Assembly: GCA_965644295.1 (NCBI GenBank)
Contig: CBFFRP010000234.1
Location: forward strand, 62,001 to 126,000
Length of the DNA stretch: 64,000 nt
Reading direction: 5' to 3'
Source of the DNA: Paraphysomonas bandaiensis
Taxonomy: Eukaryota; Protista; Chrysophyceae
Below, piece by piece: positions 2,136 to 60,367 of this stretch (position 1 is the first letter of the stretch; every line of letters starts with the position of its first letter). Both the position numbers and the translations under genes were made by a program. Below the pieces are notes generated by a model. That model did not search any database and had not been told where the DNA came from. It saw nothing but the letters and a program-made list of their open reading frames with translations.

Positions 2136-3405
2136 ATGTCATTGGCTCGCTCTCGTATATTTATTGTTGGCGCAAAGCGCACTCCTTTTGGTAACCTAAA
2201 TGCTGCTGCATTCTCTTGTTGTGATCAGTAACGTGCTCTGCTGTATAGGTGCTTTTGGAGGCAAACTGAAGCACTTGACGGCAACAGAACTCGCTACTCA
2301 TAGTTCTGTTGCTGCACTGGCTGAGGCAAATGTTCCTGGAGCTAAAGTTGATGAAGCTTTTTTCGGAAACGTTATTCAGAGTTCTTTGGATGCCGCCTAT
2401 TTAGCTAGACATGTTGCTCTCAAGTCTGGAGCCCCAGTCCCCTCTCCTGCATTGACTGTTAACCGACTCTGTGGAAGTGGGTTTGAAGCTGTGTGTCTAG
2501 GTGCTGAAGCCATTGAACTTAATCGTGCTAGCATTACACTCTGTGGTGGAACGGAGAACATGTCCCAGTGCCCCATGGTAATGGACGGGTTGACCGCTCG
2601 CTGGGGTGCCCCTCTGGGCAAAGGAATGAAATGTGAAGACAGCCTTTGGGCAGGATTAACTGATGCCCATGCTGGTCTCTCCATGGGTCTCACTGCTGAG
2701 AATCTTGCGGAGAAGTATGACATTTCCCGTGAGGAATGCGATGCATATGCTCTGCGCAGTCAGCAGTCTTGGGCCCGTGCTAATGAGGCTGGTGTATTTA
2801 ATGCCGAAATCGCCCCCGTGGAAATCAAAACGCGCAAGGGAGTTGAGTCTATGACTGCGGATGAGCATCCTCGCCCGTCCACTGTTCTTCCTGACCTCAT
2901 CAAGTTAAAGCCTGTCTTCAAACCTGACGGTAGAGTGACTGCTGGTTCCGCATCAGGAATATGCGATGGTGCCGCCAGTCTAGTTGTTGCCAGCGAAGAG
3001 GCATGCAAAGAGAACAATCTTGTTCCACTTAGTCGTGTGGTTGCATGGGCGCGTTCCGGATGTGACCCCTCTTGTATGGGTATCGGACCTGTACCTGCAA
3101 TTGAGTCGGTTCTTAAGGCTACTAACCTCTCGTTAGCTGACATCGAGATTGTAGAGATTAATGAAGCATTTGCGGCACAGTACTTATCTTGCGAAAAAGC
3201 ATTGGGATTGAATCGTGATGTGGTCAATGTCAACGGTGGAGCTATTGCTTTGGGACATCCTCTGGGTGCATCTGGAGCGCGTATTCTAGCCCATCTCACC
3301 CATGAGCTCCGTCGCACCGGAAAGAGATACGGTCTTGGAGCCGCTTGTATTGGTGGTGGGCAGGGAATCGCTGTACTTCTAGAGAATGCTGATGCTTCTG
3401 CTTGA
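2136..3405 (+). CDS. ACAA2: 3-ketoacyl-CoA thiolase (ACAA2-like)
   Basis: Exon 1 MSLARSRIFIVGAKRTPFG, then GT-AG intron ~2191-2248. Thiolase motifs NRLCGSG, NEAF, GGAIALGHPLGASG and CIGGGQG. Confidence 0.93.
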
Positions 3406-41080: not shown

Positions 41081-42768
41081 CTAATTTTCAAACCTCTGTT
41101 GAAACAACTGGTATAGGTCCTCCAGTTTATCAAGAGTCACATCTTGCGCTTTCTTTATCTGTTTCAACTCTTCCTCCAATGCCTCTATATGTGCATGCAT
41201 CTGGGTGTATGACAGTTGACTTTCTTGTATCGGACAAGTGGCAGGACTAGGAGCTGGAGAAACGTGTTCTTTCCGCCTATCTATGGCTTTTTCGATCAAT
41301 CGGTTCTCCGCCTCCGATGGTGCATTTGATCTTAGTCGAGACAATGCACTGACCTATAGAAGTCCCCATTAATAGGAATACATTGTGGAATAGCATTCTT
41401 ACATTACTTTTCTGACTTCCCCATTCCATATCAAAGATCCTGTTAAGCGTGGACGAAAAGTTCTTGAAAGTATTGTCGCGATAATCGTCGTACCACACAC
41501 TTATGCGTTGTTGCAGATCATCCAATGAACTGTACAGAGAGTTGTTACAGAAATACTAATATACGCAGTACCAACGCACGCTGCATCAACACTCATTGCA
41601 AAATCGATTGCATCAGTCCAGTTGTCGAAAATGGGACCGGGGTACCCCACCCACACTACATCAAAAATAACTACGTTTATGAGGAAAACATTGCACGAAC
41701 TCACTGTTGAGAAAATCCGAGTGAGAAGGAGGACGAACTATCAGAGGTATCGAACCCATTTCCATAGCCTGCATTGTACAAATCTGATCAACCTAATCAC
41801 CAAGAAAATAGATATCACACCTCGTAGTGCCGAAACGTTTCAGGGCTATTTCCAGCTGGACAAGGGGTAAACACGGTTTCAGAAAGCTTCTCTATATACT
41901 GTTCGAATGTATAACTGTGACCATCTCTGCCGTCAAGATCGTACACAGCTTGACATGCTTTATCTCCGAGAGCTATATGAGATTCGGAAGTTATTATTCG
42001 CAAAAATTCGTCTCGCTCATAATTGAACACAGACGGTCCACCATTATCCTCTGCATACTGAATGCGCCCCGCAAAAACGCACCACCTAGGCCGTTGAGAT
42101 GACGGTATCATTGAATGGGCGGCATTATATAAACGTAATTCCCGAGGACGCAGAGAGAGGAGCGGAACGTACTGGGAAACAGATGCAAACGGTTCGAAGT
42201 AGTAGTTACGGAACACATGCTGATAATTACTATACACAGAGGGGAGGTGAGATGCATGGCATGTGTTTCCATCAGTGCGAAGGCCGAATGATCTGTTAAG
42301 GTTCCACGGCTGCTCGTGGTTCATGTGGAAAATTGTAGCTCTAGTGTGGCCCAGATAGTACCTTGCTGCACTTAAAAGGCATATATCGTACAACAGAACC
42401 TGATCTTGAATTAACACAAACAAAGTCTTCCTGGGTACATGTTTCAATGCATCTCTAAAGAGATCATGACGACGAGGAATCCCACTGAGTATAACATGCA
42501 CACTCTGCGTGTCTCTGGTGAGTTCTAGCATGTATTCTAAGTATATCTTGAAATACGGATCCAGCTCATGATCGAATGTTGTCCATAGAATAACGATCTT
42601 ATTCATAAGATCAGCCGCTTCAAACACTTCTTGTGCGTACTCAGCAGACTCTGCGATGAAATAGAGTTCAGTTGGATCAAATTTCATTCGAAAGTTATCA
42701 AACATAGTGGAGGAGTAGCTCACAGGGGCTAGAGATGCGAGAAGAACTACAAGCAGGTGGGGTGTCAT
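41081..42768 (-). CDS. Exostosin/GT47-like (RXYLT1-like) glycosyltransferase with signal peptide or anchor
   Basis: Hydrophobic N-terminus. Spliced FTPCPAGNSPETFRHYE|AMEMGSIP matches the GT47 C-terminal motif. Coiled-coil last exon. Confidence 0.75.
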
Positions 42769-43182
42769 GCTCTATGGTTAATAGAGGGGGTTATGGTGAT
42801 GTTATGTGTGGATGCCGCCTGGTGATGGAAGAAGCAAGTATCGCTCACGCAAGATATATACTGAGGCTGTATACACCAGTACACAGTGTGTCGTCCAGTA
42901 CTGAACTGTACACCAGCACACACCGCATTGTACTTATGTACCTATCATATTTGTATGCAGCCGTACATGTTACACAGATCACAGATCGAGTACAGTGGAT
43001 GTCCATTGAAGGTGTATACATACCTATACAACAGTAGCGTAGTGCTCTGCATGTACATGGACACCATTAACACGCACTCTCTCTCTATACATACATACAT
43101 ACTGCACATATATATCACCCTCTATCCTCCCCCTCCCCCTATCACTATCACCCTCTATCCTCCTCATGCCATACCCCTCCCT

Positions 43183-45798
43183 ATGAGCGGCACACATAAA
43201 CTAGAGAAGTACTTGTTGAGGCAGCTGATGGCTGGTCTCGAGTCATGGCCATCATCATCAGACATATGCAGGACCCGCCTAGCCCATCAGCTGATACAGG
43301 AGATACGAGATGATATTACATCCACACAGGTGCATCATAAGGAGTTCAACTCTCTCTTGAGGGTGAAGGGTGAAGAAGTGGTGGGGATTGTAAGGCGCAC
43401 ACCGCGTGATGTGAACGAGCTGCTGCTTCAGTCTGATAGAGTTCGCTTACTGATAGATGAGAATAATAAAAGACTGCAGCTGGGACAATCGACTTATTTA
43501 GACATTGTCTCTCACCACACGAACCTGTCTTCTTCAGGCTGGGAGCAGGGAATAAAGAACGACGAGGCACTGCGTCGCTACGGTAGAAGCGCAGAAGAAA
43601 TGGGAAGTCGTAGCTGGGTAGTTGAGGCTAACCAGTGGATGTGGCGTACTGTGAACTCGTTTTTTAATGGCCGCGGCGCCGTGAAGGAGTATATTAAGGA
43701 TGTTGCAAGTATGACTGGTGAATATGTATACGTTGAGCGCCCTCTATCAACAAGAATCAGTCCGGTGAGAGTATTGGATGTGGGCAGCTGCTATAACCCT
43801 TTGGGTGAGATGCAGCACCAGAATGAGTCATCAGGACTGAAGATTGAGGTCACTGCGCTTGATCTTCACCCCAGACATCCTTCTGTACACAGATGTGACT
43901 TCTTTTCATTGTCTGATGGGCCGCCGTTATCACCTCCTGTGTTTGAACACTCAGTATCCAGTTCGAACAGTAATAGCGTCCTTGTCCGCCTACCTTTGCG
44001 CTCTTATGATGCAGTATGTATGTCACTTGTGCTCTCCTATCTCCCCTCTGCAGAAATGCGGCGACGGATGATTGCCCGGGCTAGGGAATTTCTCGTTCAA
44101 CCAGATGCCCCAGATCTATCCGCTCCCTCTATAGTTACAGAAGACAGACTGCGCTACGGACTTTTACTGGTAGTTGAGCCTTTCTCCACTCTCCGATGTT
44201 ATGATTGGCTAGGCGATGCACCAATCGCAGACAATGATGGTGTCTTTTCGTCACGCACACCGCATGGAGTGGAGAGAACCCGTTGGCGTCGTGTAATTGA
44301 GAGCCAGGGATATAGATTTGTCAAGTCGGAGGTATTACACTGTAGTACCGGGAAGAAAAAGGCTATAGGAATGGTATATCGTGCATGTTCTATTGGTGCG
44401 CAGTCACGCCACTACTCTACTGCGGCTACTCCAGCACCAGTTGGCATTGTTGGGTGCGGACTGGGTGGGGCTGCTCTGGCCTGCATATTACAACACCGTG
44501 GCATCCCATTTTACGTATTCGAAGCTGACGAATCCCTTTCCTCTCGTCGTCAGGGTTATGCACTCACTGTCCAGCAGGGATTAACTGCGCTTCGTACAAT
44601 GGGTGTTCGGTTGCCAGGGGAGGTTGGTTCTGGGCCAGTTCTTCATGGCTGCACAACCACTCATTCACACATATCTCTCACATCCACGGGGCGGGTACTA
44701 GGCGCATTCGGCCCCCCTAGTGTAGTAACCGCTGTTTCTCCAGACTACTTCGGTGAATGTAACGATTTTCTTCTTGCAGCAGAGGCTTTAAATGACATAT
44801 CTCCTGCTATTAAGACCGGAAGAGGAAGGCAAAACATTCATATTCCTCGACAGTCTCTGAGGGGCGCTCTGATGGAGGCTTTCGATCCGTCGTCTATACG
44901 CTGGGGTCACCGTTTTGCAACGGTAAATCGCATTCATGCTGGTGGTTTGGTTGCTCGTTTTGAGAATGGGGAATCATACGAGCTAAGCGCACTTATCGGT
45001 GCAGATGGAGTGTACAGTCGCATCAGACAACTATTATTGGACCAAAGAAATGAGGAAAATAGCGTAACCCCATCGAATCGTAGTGTCGGTCTAAATTTTC
45101 TCGGGTTGATAGTCATCCTTGGTATTTCTCCACAGGAAGACTTGTGTCATGGACTTTTACAGGAGCCGCTACTTGCCTCTCGGCGGAAGGTGCAGTGGGT
45201 CGATGGTGTCACGCGAGTATTCTCCATGCCCTTCGACGAGAGAAACACCCTTTGGCAGCTTTCGTTTCCTATGACGGAAAAGGAGATTCTTTCTGTGAAA
45301 TCGAGAGATATGAAATCGTTAGCATTCGATCGATGCAAAAACTGGCATACGCCCTTAGTGCGAATGATAGAAAACACAGATGAAAATTTGGTTACAGGCC
45401 ACCCAGTGTATGACAGTGACCCCCATGATCTTGCCGATATGCGACGAAACGATATGCTGGTCGGTGGTTCATCGACACCTATCACTCTGCTTGGAGATAG
45501 TTGGCACCCTATGAGTCCATTTAAAGCGCAGGGAGCAAACCAGGCACTTTTGGATGCACAATGGCTAGGTGACAACATGTCATTGTGGTTTCGGTGCCGA
45601 CATCAACCGGACGTTACAGTTGCAAGTTATTTTCAAACATACGAGGCTGAAGCACACCCAAGAGCTGTAAAAAAAGTATTGAAGAGTCGATCTGCAGCTA
45701 TATATCTCCACTCTCCTGCTGCTCTTACTCCAGGAAATATCACCCGAGCTTTCGCTGCAGAGCGCTTTATTCCTACTCAAGAACGAAATGTAAAATAG
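43183..45798 (+). CDS. Fusion of SAMTOR/BMT2-like SAM-binding domain and FAD-dependent monooxygenase
   Basis: One uninterrupted frame, likely ATG 43183 (871 aa). SAMTOR-like motifs VLDVGSCYNP, HRCDF and SLVLSYLP are followed by IVGCGLGG, RRQGYALT, LIGADG and LLGDSWHPMSPFKAQGANQALLDA. Confidence 0.85.
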   Translation: MSGTHKLEKYLLRQLMAGLESWPSSSDICRTRLAHQLIQEIRDDITSTQVHHKEFNSLLRVKGEEVVGIVRRTPRDVNELLLQSDRVRLLIDENNKRLQLGQSTYLDIVSHHTNLSSSGWEQGIKNDEALRRYGRSAEEMGSRSWVVEANQWMWRTVNSFFNGRGAVKEYIKDVASMTGEYVYVERPLSTRISPVRVLDVGSCYNPLGEMQHQNESSGLKIEVTALDLHPRHPSVHRCDFFSLSDGPPLSPPVFEHSVSSSNSNSVLVRLPLRSYDAVCMSLVLSYLPSAEMRRRMIARAREFLVQPDAPDLSAPSIVTEDRLRYGLLLVVEPFSTLRCYDWLGDAPIADNDGVFSSRTPHGVERTRWRRVIESQGYRFVKSEVLHCSTGKKKAIGMVYRACSIGAQSRHYSTAATPAPVGIVGCGLGGAALACILQHRGIPFYVFEADESLSSRRQGYALTVQQGLTALRTMGVRLPGEVGSGPVLHGCTTTHSHISLTSTGRVLGAFGPPSVVTAVSPDYFGECNDFLLAAEALNDISPAIKTGRGRQNIHIPRQSLRGALMEAFDPSSIRWGHRFATVNRIHAGGLVARFENGESYELSALIGADGVYSRIRQLLLDQRNEENSVTPSNRSVGLNFLGLIVILGISPQEDLCHGLLQEPLLASRRKVQWVDGVTRVFSMPFDERNTLWQLSFPMTEKEILSVKSRDMKSLAFDRCKNWHTPLVRMIENTDENLVTGHPVYDSDPHDLADMRRNDMLVGGSSTPITLLGDSWHPMSPFKAQGANQALLDAQWLGDNMSLWFRCRHQPDVTVASYFQTYEAEAHPRAVKKVLKSRSAAIYLHSPAALTPGNITRAFAAERFIPTQERNVK

Positions 45799-46151
45799 AA
45801 TATTGGACAATAGAAGTGTTACTGTGCTTGTGTGATTATGTATTGCTGAACACACATCGTTTATATTTTTTCATATTTATTGTGACTTTACTGTGGTGTG
45901 TTTTTGTAGCAATGGATAAACTATTATTTCCTTCAGCTTTATCATCTGTGTTTGGCATTTGTAGAGTAGACAAACATCTATAAAGACAAAAGTAATCGCT
46001 GTCATTCCGACATCCCCAATACAGGATACACCAAAGTATAATTGTTAATTAGGGTAGTCAAAACAACGCCACTCTTCATCTCTGCATGCCAGTTGGGGAG
46101 TACTGTAGCGACGAAAACTGGCAAGAAGAGCATGCTCAATGCTGAACCAAT

Positions 46152-47652
46152 TCAATCTTCACCACCACCAGTTCCAGGAAGGACACCAGGTAGTCGCAAA
46201 AACTCCTACAACGAAGGAAAGTAAATATCATATCAAATTACTTTCTGTCTTTTAAATACCTCAAAAGATAGTGTCCCTGAACCATCTTCATCATATTTTC
46301 GCATCAACTTTTTCAATCGACGTTTCCTCATGAATGTTCCATTAAGCAGTAGCGCACGATTTAGCTCACTGAGAAAACGAATTATAGGATTCATACATAT
46401 ATTCGCAAATAGTACCGTATGTTAAGGGAGCCACTTTGATCCTTGTCAAAGTAATCGAATACTCTTCTTGCTTCCGCAACAGGATCAAACATTTGTTCAA
46501 CGTCACCACTTTCTACAGCTCCGGCTTCTTCAACTTCTTCCTCTTCTACCTCAATTTCAACATCTGTATCCTCGTCCTCTCCCCTGTATTCGTACATAAA
46601 ACAAAAAAACAGCTTATATTCATTCCACCTTTCAAACAAAGCAGTAGAATCATCCTCATCCTCTGGAGTGAAGTCTGTATCGGTCAAACCATAAATCGCG
46701 TATTGGCCAAGGAAATTAAACTCCTCATTGGCGGCGTAATCGTATGGAATATAGCAGTAACCACGGTCAGCCCAGCTGTCGCCCCAGCTGTTTCGGACTA
46801 TGAACCTGTAGCTCCACAATTAATACTTACACACGCTCTAACACGCGGAAAGATTGTATATTTTGAATATATATGCACCAGGAGTTACCTTTGCTCAGCA
46901 TCAGAATATCCTACGATAAGCATCGCATGCAAACCGTGCTCTGCTGACTGTGGATCAGATGGATCAGGGGTATCAATACGCCCACTGGGACCGGGATTAA
47001 AAAACTTTTTTGTAAGCTTTAGACCAAAGATTATTGGGAAGCCTTCAGCCAGACAAGCCTTCATGGCCTCGACGGTTGCGGGTATCTCTTTCGCCTCGGA
47101 TATCTTATACCGCATGGCCTGCTCTGTGCGTGCAGTGAGGTTTTGCTGTAAAATATAAGATGTATTACCAAATGCATCCGGTGGGGGGGGGGTGTTTATT
47201 TGGCTGAGGTCGAAAGGCCATGCATCGTCAAGACAAGCTCCTTTCATTGAGAGCGCATCGATCGCTCCCGTCAGTGTCATACCTTCATCACTGAGGGGGT
47301 CCGTATCTCGCCACAACTGTTTGTCTCGTAATCTACCAACATAGTAGACGAATAAACGCGATATATCTCCAGGAGTGTCGCCGCTCATGGCAGCTTCTCG
47401 CCAACAGAGGTATTCATAGGCCCCAACTGCAGCATTAGCACAGCAGGAATTGGACTGAGACTGATCCTCAACTGGACTGCAATACTTTCTGAGGTCTACT
47501 CGTGAGGGGGGTTCACGAGAGGGAGAGAACACACCAGTCTTTATGGGTGGAGGAGCTCTCTCGGGCTTCATTCCATGACTCGCTATGCGCTTACCATGCT
47601 TGTTTTTTATTATTCTCTTCACTCGCTTTCTAGCTCTTCTGAGATAGTCCAT
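46152..47652 (-). CDS. Papain-family (C1A, xylellain-like) cysteine protease with two C-terminal EF-hands
   Basis: VDLR, DQSQSNSCCANA (catalytic Cys), GLHAMLIVGY (His), RNSWG (Asn), an acidic linker, then DKDQSGSLNIRE and DEDGSGTLSFEE loops after splicing. Confidence 0.88.
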
Positions 47653-47790
47653 AGCAGCTCGATGATAAGTACTGCACACCAGTCTATGCAGCAAATAGTC
47701 TGTATGGAATTATGTACAGCTGCTTGTGACAGACCCAACTGCAAGTTTGCTTTGCAGCTGGATCTTTTTGTAGGATGCATGCGGTGTACG

Positions 47791-59128: not shown

Positions 59129-60367
59129 TCAAATTTTACTGCAAAACATTGACCCCACCACCCCAGTATTTGGTGATACTTTTCCGTCTACCAGTAGCCT
59201 CCACTGATCTTTCACCCCCTCCGGGCCGTACACATGTTGCACCTTCATCCACTCTCTCGACCCCGCTACAAATACTCCAAGAGCCTCTTTCGACCTAGAA
59301 ATAAATTCTTTAAGTCCCCAACGCTCAACACAACTCGAGAACTCCGCAGGGGCGAAAAAGAGTGTTGGTGGCGGTCCTCGTACCACAGAGGCTTCAGTGG
59401 GATTGTCATGATGGCTCTTACCAATTGACATCGAATATTTAAGGTTTTCTCCAAGGACTTCGTGTAATTTGGAAACTATATCCCAGTTTCCTGACATGTC
59501 AATGATAACAGCGCCCACATTGCCACAGAGAGAGTGAACGTTATCATAAGGAATTACACGGTCAAAATAACCTGTGGATTTGACAAAATCTACATTATTG
59601 AGAGAAGTTATTCCAATTGTCTTAATTGGAAGAGAGCCAGGGCGTCGTTGAACAGATATTCGCTGGGCTATGCCGAGGGCTGTTTTACTTGATGCAGAGA
59701 TGATGTATACCTCTTCCGCACCAAGATACTCCCCATTCTTGTGGTGTCTGAAAAACTCATCTGCTAGAAAAGATGTCAAAAACAGACCTCTCAGAAGAGC
59801 TTGTCGATCTTCGCCATCTTCTGTGTCGTCCACGTTGAAGGGGTCCACATCGGTTCTGGAAAAGTCTACGTAAACTTGTGCATGCTTCGCTCGGTGCTCA
59901 CCAACGTCGAGGAATCCACCATCGGGCTTCGCTTTGCCTGTTATTGTCACATATTTGCTCATAGGATACCATCCAAAGTATTTCTCGCCAACTGTGACAT
60001 TGGGTACCAAGGACTCGATGACAGTGGCCCACCCCATCGCCGGTACACGTCCCCACTCTAGACTGCTTTCACTGGGGAAAAAGTCCCAATACCCTAGCTT
60101 ATCGCCCGCCCATGCATACGTGACAGTGTTAGCGGTCAAAGAGAACTTATCAACCTGAAGTCTAACTTCTCCTGTTTGTACTGGATTCAAAGTACTCTCC
60201 CTCACTATTCTCGTTTCTTTGATATCTCTTTTGTTTACCTATTGCTATAGTCATCTATCGATACATATAAACTGATGCTAGTAAATTACCTCTAAAGTTA
60301 CATTCGATACAGTTCGAAGCACTCCTGTGGGGCGTGTAAAGCACGTCATCCGGGAGCACCACATCAT
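59129..60367 (-). CDS. DUF2855 family protein (MDR-like fold)
   Basis: FSLTANTVTYA, YWDFFP, GRVPAMGWA, GLFLTSF, SASSKTA and LFFAP. A short first exon MMWCSRMT...TLE is followed by one intron. Confidence 0.85.

What the first reader, a model, noticed from the sequence alone, without database searches (positions are those of the whole stretch)
43183..45798. SAMTOR (SAM sensor) domain fused to a flavin monooxygenase
Seen: one stop-free, intron-free frame joins a SAMTOR/BMT2-like domain (~43540-44385) to a complete FAD-dependent monooxygenase (~44440-45780; GxGxxG, DG and GD motifs). The SAMTOR part has WEQ..NDEALRRY...W, VLDVGSCYNP, CDF, SLVLSYLP, GLLLV and W..IESQG. Established: animal SAMTOR is a stand-alone SAM sensor upstream of mTORC1, and yeast Bmt2 is an rRNA m1A methyltransferase. 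Inference: either a SAM-regulated hydroxylase or a bifunctional methylate/hydroxylate enzyme. I do not know this architecture from the literature.
Basis: partly seen in the sequence, partly recalled or inferred. Interest (0 to 1): 0.8.

Follow-up and report, generated by a model that had tools for sequence, protein, structure and literature searches.

The report
SAMTOR-family methyltransferase fused to flavin monooxygenase
One expressed, intron-free gene joins a full-length relative of the animal SAM sensor SAMTOR to a complete flavin monooxygenase, and the same fusion recurs in distant protists and a brown alga, which suggests the SAMTOR family began as a working enzyme partner rather than as an mTORC1 sensor.

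Summary
Window 43183-45798 (+) is one 871-codon frame. Residues 96-401 are a full-length SAMTOR/Bmt2-family class I methyltransferase: Pfam PF11968 scores above its cutoff, a family profile hits human SAMTOR at E=3e-63, and the fold match has Z=20.6. The SAM-contact residues G172, D190 and D202 are conserved. Residues 419-871 are a complete group A flavin monooxygenase (PF01494) with GxGxxG, DG and GD motifs and a TetX/AbsH3/HpxO-like fold.

An RNA-run contig lies colinear over 43106-45786 with no joint, while both neighbouring genes are spliced. At least 12 relatives at 31-38% identity carry the same fusion, including Ectocarpus fasciculatus. Two apparent "adjacent unfused genes" turned out to be intron or stop artefacts of gene calling.

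The monooxygenase halves form one clade, sister to stand-alone bacterial enzymes. The linker varies from 21 to 164 residues.

My best reading is a bifunctional hydroxylate-plus-methylate enzyme, analogous to fungal CTB3/ElcB/PsoF but built on a different methyltransferase family. A SAM-gated hydroxylase is not excluded, and the substrate is unknown.

I found no paper describing this architecture. I class it as a new variant of a known kind, of moderate interest.

The parts
43166..43186 (+). six-codon upstream ORF (ATG CCA TAC CCC TCC CTA TGA) overlapping the main ATG, inside the transcribed 5' leader
   Evidence: Sequence read; the RNA contig starts at or before 43106. Its function was not tested.
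43183..45798 (+). whole coding sequence, 871 aa plus stop, no intron
   Evidence: ORF and translation. A colinear 2,714-nt RNA-run contig covers 43106-45786. In-frame upstream ATGs at 43051 and 43057 lie before the contig start and encode low-complexity sequence with no match in relatives.
43183..43467 (+). N-terminal helical extension (aa 1-95), absent from animal SAMTOR
   Evidence: The AF2 model has helices 4-19, 27-46, 52-72 and 77-81 with pLDDT above 90. The profile match to human SAMTOR starts only at profile position 96. The extension is shared with a roughly 550-aa PF11968 cluster of protists and green algae (aligned 2-409).
43468..44385 (+). SAMTOR/Bmt2-family domain (aa 96-401): helical lid plus class I methyltransferase core
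   Evidence: PF11968 scores above its cutoff. A single-sequence phmmer search hits SAMTOR chains at E about 4e-10. The family profile hits human SAMTOR 9o5d at E=3.3e-63, chain 27-349. VIA-align gives Z=20.6 (7yri), 19.4 (7vkk) and 17.0 (9o5d).
43771..43800 (+). motif I VLDVGSCYNP (G201 = human G172; Y204 = human F175)
   Evidence: D199, G201, S202, C203 and Y204 are invariant in 30 family members. The mapping to human SAMTOR comes from the alignment. The roles of the residues come from PMC10883374.
43861..43863 (+). D227, equivalent to human SAMTOR D190 (SAM ribose contact)
   Evidence: Invariant; aligned to GID190I; D190A abolishes SAM binding (PMC10883374).
43897..43899 (+). D239, equivalent to human SAMTOR D202
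   Evidence: Nearly invariant; aligned to KCD202F; D202A is SAM-binding deficient.
44023..44046 (+). SLVLSYLP motif (after strand 4), shared with SAMTOR FSLLLSYFPSP
44386..44436 (+). short inter-domain linker, low model confidence
   Evidence: pLDDT is below 50 at aa 407-413. Linker length ranges from 21 to 164 aa across fused relatives. The LWIxQDF motif found in most relatives and in human SAMTOR is missing here.
44437..45795 (+). group A flavoprotein monooxygenase domain (aa 419-871)
   Evidence: PF01494 scores 50-53 bits. PDB sequence hits include AbsH3 at 2e-17, TrlE, 4hb9, NicC and TetX. Foldseek gives TM (normalised by target) of 0.77-0.80 to AbsH3, TetX, HpxO and TrlE.
44452..44469 (+). 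GxGxxG dinucleotide-binding motif (GCGLGG)
   Evidence: G424, G426 and G429 are invariant; position.
44995..45027 (+). DG motif (IGADGVYSRIR)
   Evidence: D608 and G609 are invariant; position.
45487..45558 (+). GD motif and flavin-contact helix (LLGDSWHPMSPFKAQGANQALLDA)
   Evidence: The motif is shared almost letter for letter with the bacterial sister clade (GDAAHPMSPFKGQGANQALLDA).

Best explanation
This is a real, expressed single polypeptide belonging to a conserved eukaryotic family. A SAMTOR/Bmt2-family class I methyltransferase with an intact SAM pocket is joined by a flexible linker to a single-component FAD- and NAD(P)H-dependent group A monooxygenase.

Most likely it is a bifunctional tailoring enzyme. 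The C-terminal domain uses reduced FAD and O2 to hydroxylate an electron-rich aromatic or heteroaromatic substrate. The N-terminal domain transfers a methyl group from SAM to the same molecule, either to the new hydroxyl or to a ring nitrogen.

Shown: the gene, its transcript, both folds, the cofactor-binding residues, the conservation of the fusion, and the single clade of the monooxygenase halves.

Inferred: catalytic activity of the methyltransferase half, the order of the two reactions, and the class of substrate. The substrate's identity is unknown.

My confidence that the fusion is real is about 0.95. My confidence in the bifunctional mechanism is about 0.45-0.5.
For: Both domains are complete and their cofactor residues are conserved. 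One RNA contig crosses the junction, and the neighbouring genes assemble into separate contigs.

Nine full-length relatives carry PF11968 plus PF01494. L002, L003 and Ectocarpus fasciculatus L008 are also fused across the junction. L002 and L008 share an intron position inside the RKQ|GYALT motif.

In the monooxygenase tree, all fusions fall on one side of a 100% SH-aLRT split.

The linker varies from 21 to 164 residues and is of low complexity. That fits two enzymes on a string better than a fixed allosteric interface.

Unfused members of the same monooxygenase clade exist (P0061 on L089, P0072 on L090), and stand-alone SAMTOR-like proteins exist in protists. This is the usual pattern for a fusion of pathway partners.

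The nearest language-model look-alike is the fungal 'dual O-methyltransferase/FAD-dependent monooxygenase ElcB' cluster (score 0.88). PsoF, another methyltransferase-monooxygenase fusion, appears among the fold hits.

After SAMTOR and nucleomethylin, the next structural neighbour is a small-molecule heteroaromatic N-methyltransferase, 5ufm (Z=14.6).
Against: No methyltransferase activity has been detected for SAMTOR itself (PMC11514484), so the family includes at least one apparently non-catalytic SAM binder. The residues conserved in the fused family are also conserved in animal SAMTOR, so they do not separate an enzyme from a sensor.

The only member with a known substrate, yeast Bmt2, methylates rRNA rather than a small molecule (my own knowledge).

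The full-length model has pTM 0.71, which hints at some preferred domain packing.

There is no biosynthetic cluster around the gene. Bacterial synteny gives no support either: two bacterial relatives had a methyltransferase next door, but 80 further loci showed no homolog of those and no conserved neighbour at all.

No curated equivalog names the monooxygenase; the best is HpxO at 75 bits against a cutoff of 500.
Confidence: 0.48

Rival explanations
1. SAM-gated hydroxylase. The SAMTOR-like half is a non-catalytic SAM sensor whose helical lid closes on SAM binding, as proposed for animal SAMTOR, and switches the attached monooxygenase on or off. This would couple an oxidation step to methyl-donor supply.
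For: SAMTOR binds SAM without detected methyltransferase activity, and its N-terminal helical domain acts as a SAM-dependent switch (PMC10883374). The lid helices and their invariant residues (H112, Y133, W145, W152) are conserved here. The full-length pTM of 0.71 is higher than expected for two freely tumbling domains.
Against: The linker is hypervariable in length, 21-164 aa. Unfused monooxygenases of the same clade exist. The bacterial sister enzymes work without any SAMTOR-like domain. No precedent is known to me for a group A monooxygenase regulated by a fused methyltransferase-fold sensor.
Confidence: 0.22
2. Macromolecule-directed modifier. The Bmt2-like half binds and N-methylates an RNA base, as yeast Bmt2 does for m1A in 25S rRNA, and the monooxygenase hydroxylates a base or residue on the same RNA or ribonucleoprotein.
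For: The family includes an rRNA m1A methyltransferase (Pfam PF11968 description). Nucleomethylin, a nucleolar methyltransferase-like protein, is the best non-SAMTOR fold hit (Z=17.3). The bacterial sister monooxygenases carry a basic N-terminal extension resembling the DnaJ CxxCxGxG zinc finger, which could bind a macromolecule. They are about 70% identical across phyla and have no conserved neighbours, as expected of a housekeeping gene. The best curated family hit, HpxO, acts on a purine.
Against: I know of no PHBH-fold monooxygenase that hydroxylates RNA. The zinc-finger hit is below Pfam's cutoff (23-24 bits against 32.7). The closest structural relatives of the monooxygenase half all act on small molecules.
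Confidence: 0.13
3. Artefact. Two adjacent genes were joined by an assembly or reading error, or are expressed only as separate mRNAs.
For: A contig across two genes does not by itself prove one transcript (tool caution). An additional internal start for a monooxygenase-only mRNA cannot be excluded.
Against: The frame is continuous. The junction is present in six runs from four studies, and a colinear RNA contig crosses it. The same junction is open in at least 12 independent relatives. GC content is similar in the two halves, 0.49 and 0.485.
Confidence: 0.03

Closest known systems
Animal SAMTOR (human BMT2/C7orf60; Drosophila dSAMTOR; PDB 9o5d, 7vkk, 7yri)
   Same: Homologous over the helical lid, the class I methyltransferase core and the C-terminal strands (profile E=3.3e-63 over chain residues 27-349; Z=17-20.6). 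The SAM-contact residues G172, D190 and D202 are conserved as G201, D227 and D239.
   Different: SAMTOR is a stand-alone protein of about 405 aa that binds GATOR1-KICSTOR. This protein has about 95 extra N-terminal residues and Tyr in place of Phe175. It lacks the LWIxQDF motif and is fused to a monooxygenase. The equivalent of R95 is unclear.
Yeast Bmt2, 25S rRNA (adenine2142-N1)-methyltransferase (PF11968)
   Same: Same Pfam family. A fungal Bmt2 cluster aligns structurally over aa 99-410 (213 residues; TM 0.67 normalised by the fungal model).
   Different: Fungal Bmt2 proteins are shorter (about 265 aa in that cluster) and stand alone. No sequence comparison with the yeast protein itself could be made here, and rRNA activity was not tested.
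Fungal dual methyltransferase/FAD-monooxygenase enzymes: CTB3 (cercosporin), ElcB (elsinochrome), PsoF (pseurotin)
   Same: One polypeptide with a SAM methyltransferase and a PF01494 monooxygenase acting on the same small molecule. CTB3 and ElcB have the same N-to-C order. ElcB is the best atlas look-alike (0.88), and the PsoF methyltransferase domain is among the fold hits.
   Different: Their methyltransferase domain belongs to another family (PF00891 in ElcB). They sit in polyketide gene clusters, whereas this gene has no such neighbours.
TetX / AbsH3 / TrlE / HpxO / NicC group A flavoprotein monooxygenases
   Same: Same fold and the same three fingerprint motifs.
   Different: Only 16-22% identity in the fold alignments. 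Every curated equivalog scores far below its cutoff, so no substrate can be transferred.
Bacterial (mostly Flavobacteriia) stand-alone monooxygenases of 470-490 aa with an N-terminal CxxCxGxG pair
   Same: They form the sister clade of the fused monooxygenase halves (100% SH-aLRT split), at 33-35% identity over more than 90% of the domain. The shared motifs are RxQGY(A/G)LTxQQ, MWQLSFPM and HPMSPFKGQGANQALLDA.
   Different: They have no SAMTOR-like domain. Instead they carry a basic zinc-finger-like extension of about 84 aa, and they have no conserved neighbours.
MnmC (bacterial tRNA mnm5s2U enzyme; from my own knowledge)
   Same: A bifunctional FAD-oxidoreductase plus SAM-methyltransferase fusion that carries out two successive steps on one substrate.
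   Different: The FAD domain belongs to the DAO family rather than the PHBH fold, the methyltransferase family is different, and the substrate is tRNA.

Membership tests
SAMTOR/Bmt2 family (Pfam PF11968) | Pfam model hit above the gathering score | tested here: met
   31.8 bits for the whole protein and 34.6 bits for the N half, against a cutoff of 20.
SAMTOR/Bmt2 family (Pfam PF11968) | Homology to solved SAMTOR over the lid and the methyltransferase core | tested here: met
   Profile E=3.3e-63 to 9o5d, chain 27-349. Z=20.6 with rmsd 2.3 over 191 residues to 7yri.
SAMTOR (SAM sensor of mTORC1) | SAM-contact residues G172, D190 and D202 | tested here: met
   G201, D227 and D239 are invariant or nearly so in 30 relatives. 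The roles of the residues come from PMC10883374.
SAMTOR (SAM sensor of mTORC1) | R95 (SAM carboxylate contact) | tested here: inconclusive
   Human R95 falls in an insertion of the alignment. This protein has A149/N150 near that position. Most fused relatives have an Arg five residues before W152, but this protein has V147.
SAMTOR (SAM sensor of mTORC1) | Phe175 of the GATOR1-KICSTOR contact surface | tested here: not met
   Tyr204 occupies that position and is invariant in the protist family.
SAMTOR (SAM sensor of mTORC1) | Stand-alone protein that binds GATOR1-KICSTOR and releases it on SAM binding | not testable with these tools
   The protein is fused rather than stand-alone. Binding partners, and whether KICSTOR exists in this genome, cannot be examined from one window.
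Yeast Bmt2 rRNA m1A methyltransferase | N1-methylation of A2142 in 25S rRNA; nucleolar protein | not testable with these tools
   Only shared Pfam family membership and a structural match to a fungal Bmt2 cluster.
Group A flavoprotein monooxygenase (PF01494, PHBH fold) | GxGxxG, DG and GD fingerprints in one chain, with no separate reductase domain | tested here: met
   GCGLGG aa424-429, GADG aa606-609 and GD aa771-772 with the following helix. PF01494 scores 50-53 bits against a cutoff of 22.
Group A flavoprotein monooxygenase (PF01494, PHBH fold) | Fold match to solved members | tested here: met
   Foldseek E about 1e-22, TM (by target) 0.77-0.80 to AbsH3, TetX, 4hb9, TrlE and HpxO.
Named monooxygenase equivalogs (HpxO, COQ6/UbiH, salicylate hydroxylase, Tet(X)) | Score above the curated NCBIfam cutoff | tested here: not met
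   HpxO 75 against 500; Ubi-OHases 34 against 225; COQ6 25 against 489; salicylate 1-monooxygenase 34 against 446; Tet(X) 39 against 750.
Fungal dual O-methyltransferase/FAD monooxygenase (CTB3/ElcB type) | N-terminal methyltransferase followed by a C-terminal PF01494 monooxygenase in one chain | tested here: met
Fungal dual O-methyltransferase/FAD monooxygenase (CTB3/ElcB type) | Methyltransferase domain of the Methyltransf_2 family (PF00891) and a location in a polyketide cluster | tested here: not met
   The methyltransferase domain is PF11968 with no PF00891 hit. The neighbours are an unannotated 317-aa protein and a papain-like/EF-hand protease.

The most novel reading that the evidence does not exclude
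The SAMTOR family is ancient and was originally the catalytic or SAM-reading partner of a specific flavin monooxygenase. The two would act in a conserved, still unknown two-step modification (hydroxylation plus methylation) of a heteroaromatic metabolite or an RNA base. On this view animal SAMTOR is a relic that kept only SAM binding and was later recruited to GATOR1-KICSTOR. The fused proteins would then point to the family's lost substrate, and to a functional link between stand-alone SAMTOR-like proteins and this monooxygenase clade in other eukaryotes.
Probability: 0.2. Interest if true: 0.8.

Novelty: new variant of a known kind. Interest (0 to 1): 0.55.

Why it matters
Reviews state that SAMTOR has no readily identifiable orthologues outside vertebrates and that its origin is unclear (PMC8945916). 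They also describe it as a methyltransferase-fold protein with no detected activity (PMC11514484).

Here, full-length SAMTOR homologues with an intact SAM pocket occur in protists and a brown alga, repeatedly welded to one particular clade of flavin monooxygenases. That gives a concrete, testable handle on what the family did before it became an mTORC1 sensor. One can purify the fusion and look for a product that is 16 Da heavier, 14 Da heavier, or both.

It also predicts a functional partnership between stand-alone SAMTOR-like proteins and this monooxygenase clade. More modestly, it adds a third methyltransferase family to the known methyltransferase-monooxygenase fusions.

Tried and rejected
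1. Bacterial synteny as a clue to function. A class I methyltransferase overlaps the start of the monooxygenase gene in Polaribacter (L006) and lies one gene away in Wenyingzhuangia (L004). However, the two methyltransferases are unrelated to each other beyond the fold (E=0.009) and unrelated to the SAMTOR profile (hhalign probability 1%). F. aquidurense has none. No homologue of either was found in 80 further loci, and no neighbour family is shared by more than 6 of 83 loci. I dropped this line.

2. Ubiquinone hydroxylase (Coq6/UbiH/CoqF-like) paired with an O-methyltransferase. The scores are far below the cutoffs, so I rejected this as a membership claim.

3. Identifying the organism. Rfam and tRNA scans found nothing. 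An atlas search with the thiolase at 2200-3405 returned only bacterial clusters. Earlier first-stage notes guess 'stramenopile', which is unverified.

4. The two-genes reading in relatives. In L002 the first ORF already contains GxGxxG and is followed by two GT..AG introns. In L008 the single in-frame stop lies inside a 57-nt GT..AG intron at RKQ|GYALT. In L003 there is one in-frame TAA in the variable insert of the methyltransferase domain, with no clear intron. I could not resolve that stop, but it is not at the junction.

5. The big representative search was not run. The word search and family scans had already settled the protein, and no claim here rests on an absence of relatives.

6. Literature. 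No paper joins SAMTOR or Bmt2 with a monooxygenase.

Full report
**Observation**

Window 43183-45798 (+) is a single 871-codon frame. It lies inside a longer stop-free stretch that begins at 42886. At the window's stop frequency of 0.050, 871 consecutive sense codons have a chance of about 10^-19. Pfam finds Bmt2/SAMTOR (PF11968, 31.8-34.6 bits, cutoff 20) in the N half and FAD_binding_3 (PF01494, 50-53 bits, cutoff 22) in the C half.

**Is it one gene and one transcript?**

Six public runs from four studies hold all sampled 31-mers of the stretch.

X1 proves to be RNA. Its contigs for both neighbouring genes skip GT..AG introns of 45-83 nt on the minus strand, and one contig ends in a poly(A) tail at 46027. 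In the same run a 2,714-nt contig lies colinear on 43106-45786 with no difference and no joint. It is separate from the neighbours' contigs at 41820-42858 and 46027-47400.

So the two halves are transcribed as one unspliced stretch. A contig cannot show transcript ends, so an additional internal start is not excluded.

The ATG at 43183 is the first in-frame ATG inside that contig. The in-frame ATGs at 43051 and 43057 lie upstream of it and would add only low-complexity residues that no relative shares. A six-codon upstream ORF at 43166-43186 overlaps the start codon.

**The N half**

A single-sequence search of the PDB hits only SAMTOR chains, at E about 4e-10 over aa 195-306. A profile of 30 relatives (A2) hits human SAMTOR in the KICSTOR-GATOR1-SAMTOR complex (9o5d) at E=3.3e-63. 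The match runs from SAMTOR residue 27 to 349, so it covers the helical lid, the class I core and the C-terminal strands.

The AF2 model of aa 1-416 has pLDDT 88.3 and pTM 0.86. It matches SAMTOR best, with Z=20.6, 19.4 and 17.0. Next come nucleomethylin (Z=17.3) and then small-molecule methyltransferases (Z 14.6 or less).

Tang et al. showed that R95, D190 and D202 are needed for SAM binding and that F175 contacts GATOR1-KICSTOR (PMC10883374). Using native numbering in the alignment:
- Human G172, D190 and D202 correspond to G201, D227 and D239, which are invariant or nearly so.
- F175 is replaced by an invariant Tyr.
- The equivalent of R95 is ambiguous.

Residues 1-95 form an extra, confidently modelled helical extension that SAMTOR lacks. 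It is shared with a roughly 550-aa PF11968 cluster led by green algae. In the shape search, arthropod and chordate SAMTOR clusters align over more residues (257-265) than a fungal Bmt2 cluster does (213).

Stand-alone homologues of 380-470 aa exist in protists, among them one from Pavlovales. A scallop 'SAMTOR-like' protein is also found.

**The C half**

It is a complete group A flavoprotein monooxygenase. GxGxxG, DG and GD motifs are present and invariant. The best solved relatives are AbsH3, TrlE, 4hb9, NicC, TetX and HpxO, and the fold matches them with TM 0.77-0.80 normalised by target. No curated equivalog comes near its cutoff, so no substrate can be inherited by homology.

**The fusion is a family**

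The full-length word search found nine proteins of 839-1083 aa, at 32-38% identity, that carry both Pfam families. Invariant columns lie in both halves.

Three further loci looked like adjacent or partial genes but are fusions:
- **L002.** The 'Bmt2-only' ORF already runs through IGIVGGGIGGCAL before two GT..AG introns.
- **L003.** One frame covers aa 2-861, interrupted by a single in-frame TAA in the variable insert of the methyltransferase domain.
- **L008, the brown alga Ectocarpus fasciculatus.** A 565-codon ORF runs through the SAMTOR-like domain and linker into the monooxygenase. The only in-frame stop lies inside a 57-nt GT..AG intron at RKQ|GYALT, the same position as an intron in L002.

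A maximum-likelihood tree of 74 monooxygenase domains splits with 100% SH-aLRT. One side is a 31-row clade holding all true fusions and their fragments. The other side is a 43-row clade of stand-alone, largely bacterial enzymes. The tree used the quick method, and I left out rows with fewer than 340 aligned residues.

Within the fused clade at least two members look genuinely unfused: P0061 on a 448-kb eukaryotic contig, and P0072. The linker ranges from 21 to 164 residues. This protein has one of the shortest linkers and lacks the LWIxQDF motif that most relatives share with human SAMTOR (LYIPQDF).

**Mechanism**

The full-length model has pLDDT 85.8 and pTM 0.71. It shows two well-folded halves and a disordered linker. 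I could not inspect the interface.

I favour a bifunctional hydroxylate-and-methylate enzyme, for these reasons:
- Both cofactor sites are intact.
- The linker is hypervariable.
- Each half also exists on its own in other organisms.
- The arrangement is an established one in fungal CTB3/ElcB and PsoF.

The SAM-gated hydroxylase reading stays open. SAMTOR itself has no detected activity, and its lid is a SAM-dependent switch.

A third reading is a macromolecule-directed modifier. It draws on three points. Yeast Bmt2 is an rRNA methyltransferase. The bacterial sister enzymes carry a basic extension resembling the DnaJ zinc finger, though the Pfam hit is below cutoff. Those sister enzymes are also about 70% identical across phyla with no conserved neighbours.

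Bacterial gene neighbourhood gave no support for a methyltransferase partnership.

**Comparison and novelty**

The parts are known families, and the kind of fusion (methyltransferase plus group A monooxygenase) is known. What is new is the pairing of the SAMTOR/Bmt2 family with a monooxygenase, and the existence of clear SAMTOR homologues in algae and protists. I found neither in the searchable literature. One review states that SAMTOR has no readily identifiable orthologues outside vertebrates. Automatic databases may already list the architecture: one relative is labelled 'salicylate hydroxylase' by JGI.

I rate it a new variant of a known kind, with interest 0.55.

**Limits**

Earlier notes guess a stramenopile, and I could not verify that.
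- No activity, localisation or interface could be tested.
- The big representative search was deliberately not used.

Noticed in passing
window 46027-47694 (-): A papain-family (C1) protease gene with a C-terminal acidic and EF-hand region. It is transcribed and spliced, with at least five GT-AG introns of 45-83 nt (46205-46258, 46369-46415, 46583-46627, 46804-46886, 47124-47168) and a poly(A) site at about 46027. An earlier first-stage note already flagged it.
   Followed up: partly
window 41600-42858 (-): A 317-aa ORF (41815-42768) with no Pfam hit is transcribed divergently from the fusion gene and spliced (introns 41656-41704 and 41768-41819). One X1 contig carries small T insertions near 42685.
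   Followed up: no
window 43070-43165: A CT-rich, ACATAC-repeat low-complexity tract lies between the two divergent genes and forms the 5' leader. It contains a six-codon upstream ORF (43166-43186) whose stop overlaps the main ATG (ATGA).
   Followed up: no
P0164, P0169; loci L004-L088: The bacterial sister monooxygenases are found in more than 598 genome loci, mostly Flavobacteriia but also Verrucomicrobiota and Gammaproteobacteria, at about 70% identity. They carry a conserved, basic N-terminal extension of about 84 aa with two CxxCxGxG motifs. The DnaJ_CXXCXGXG hit is weak (E about 5e-5, below cutoff), and they have no conserved gene neighbours. Their function is unknown.
   Followed up: partly
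L002 9946-10021 and L008 10119-10175: Two distant fused relatives, a metagenome contig and Ectocarpus fasciculatus, share an intron position inside the RKQ|GYALT motif of the monooxygenase domain. The window's gene has no intron at all.
   Followed up: partly
L089 346-5738: The contig with the unfused monooxygenase P0061 carries two tandem genes of about 700 aa that combine ubiquitin, protein kinase and RING (zf-C3HC4_3) domains.
   Followed up: no
window 59129-60205 (-) and 2200-3405 (+): An intron-free DUF2855 protein (275 bits) and an intron-free thiolase. The thiolase's nearest atlas clusters are all bacterial, so these may be genes of bacterial ancestry in this eukaryote.
   Followed up: no
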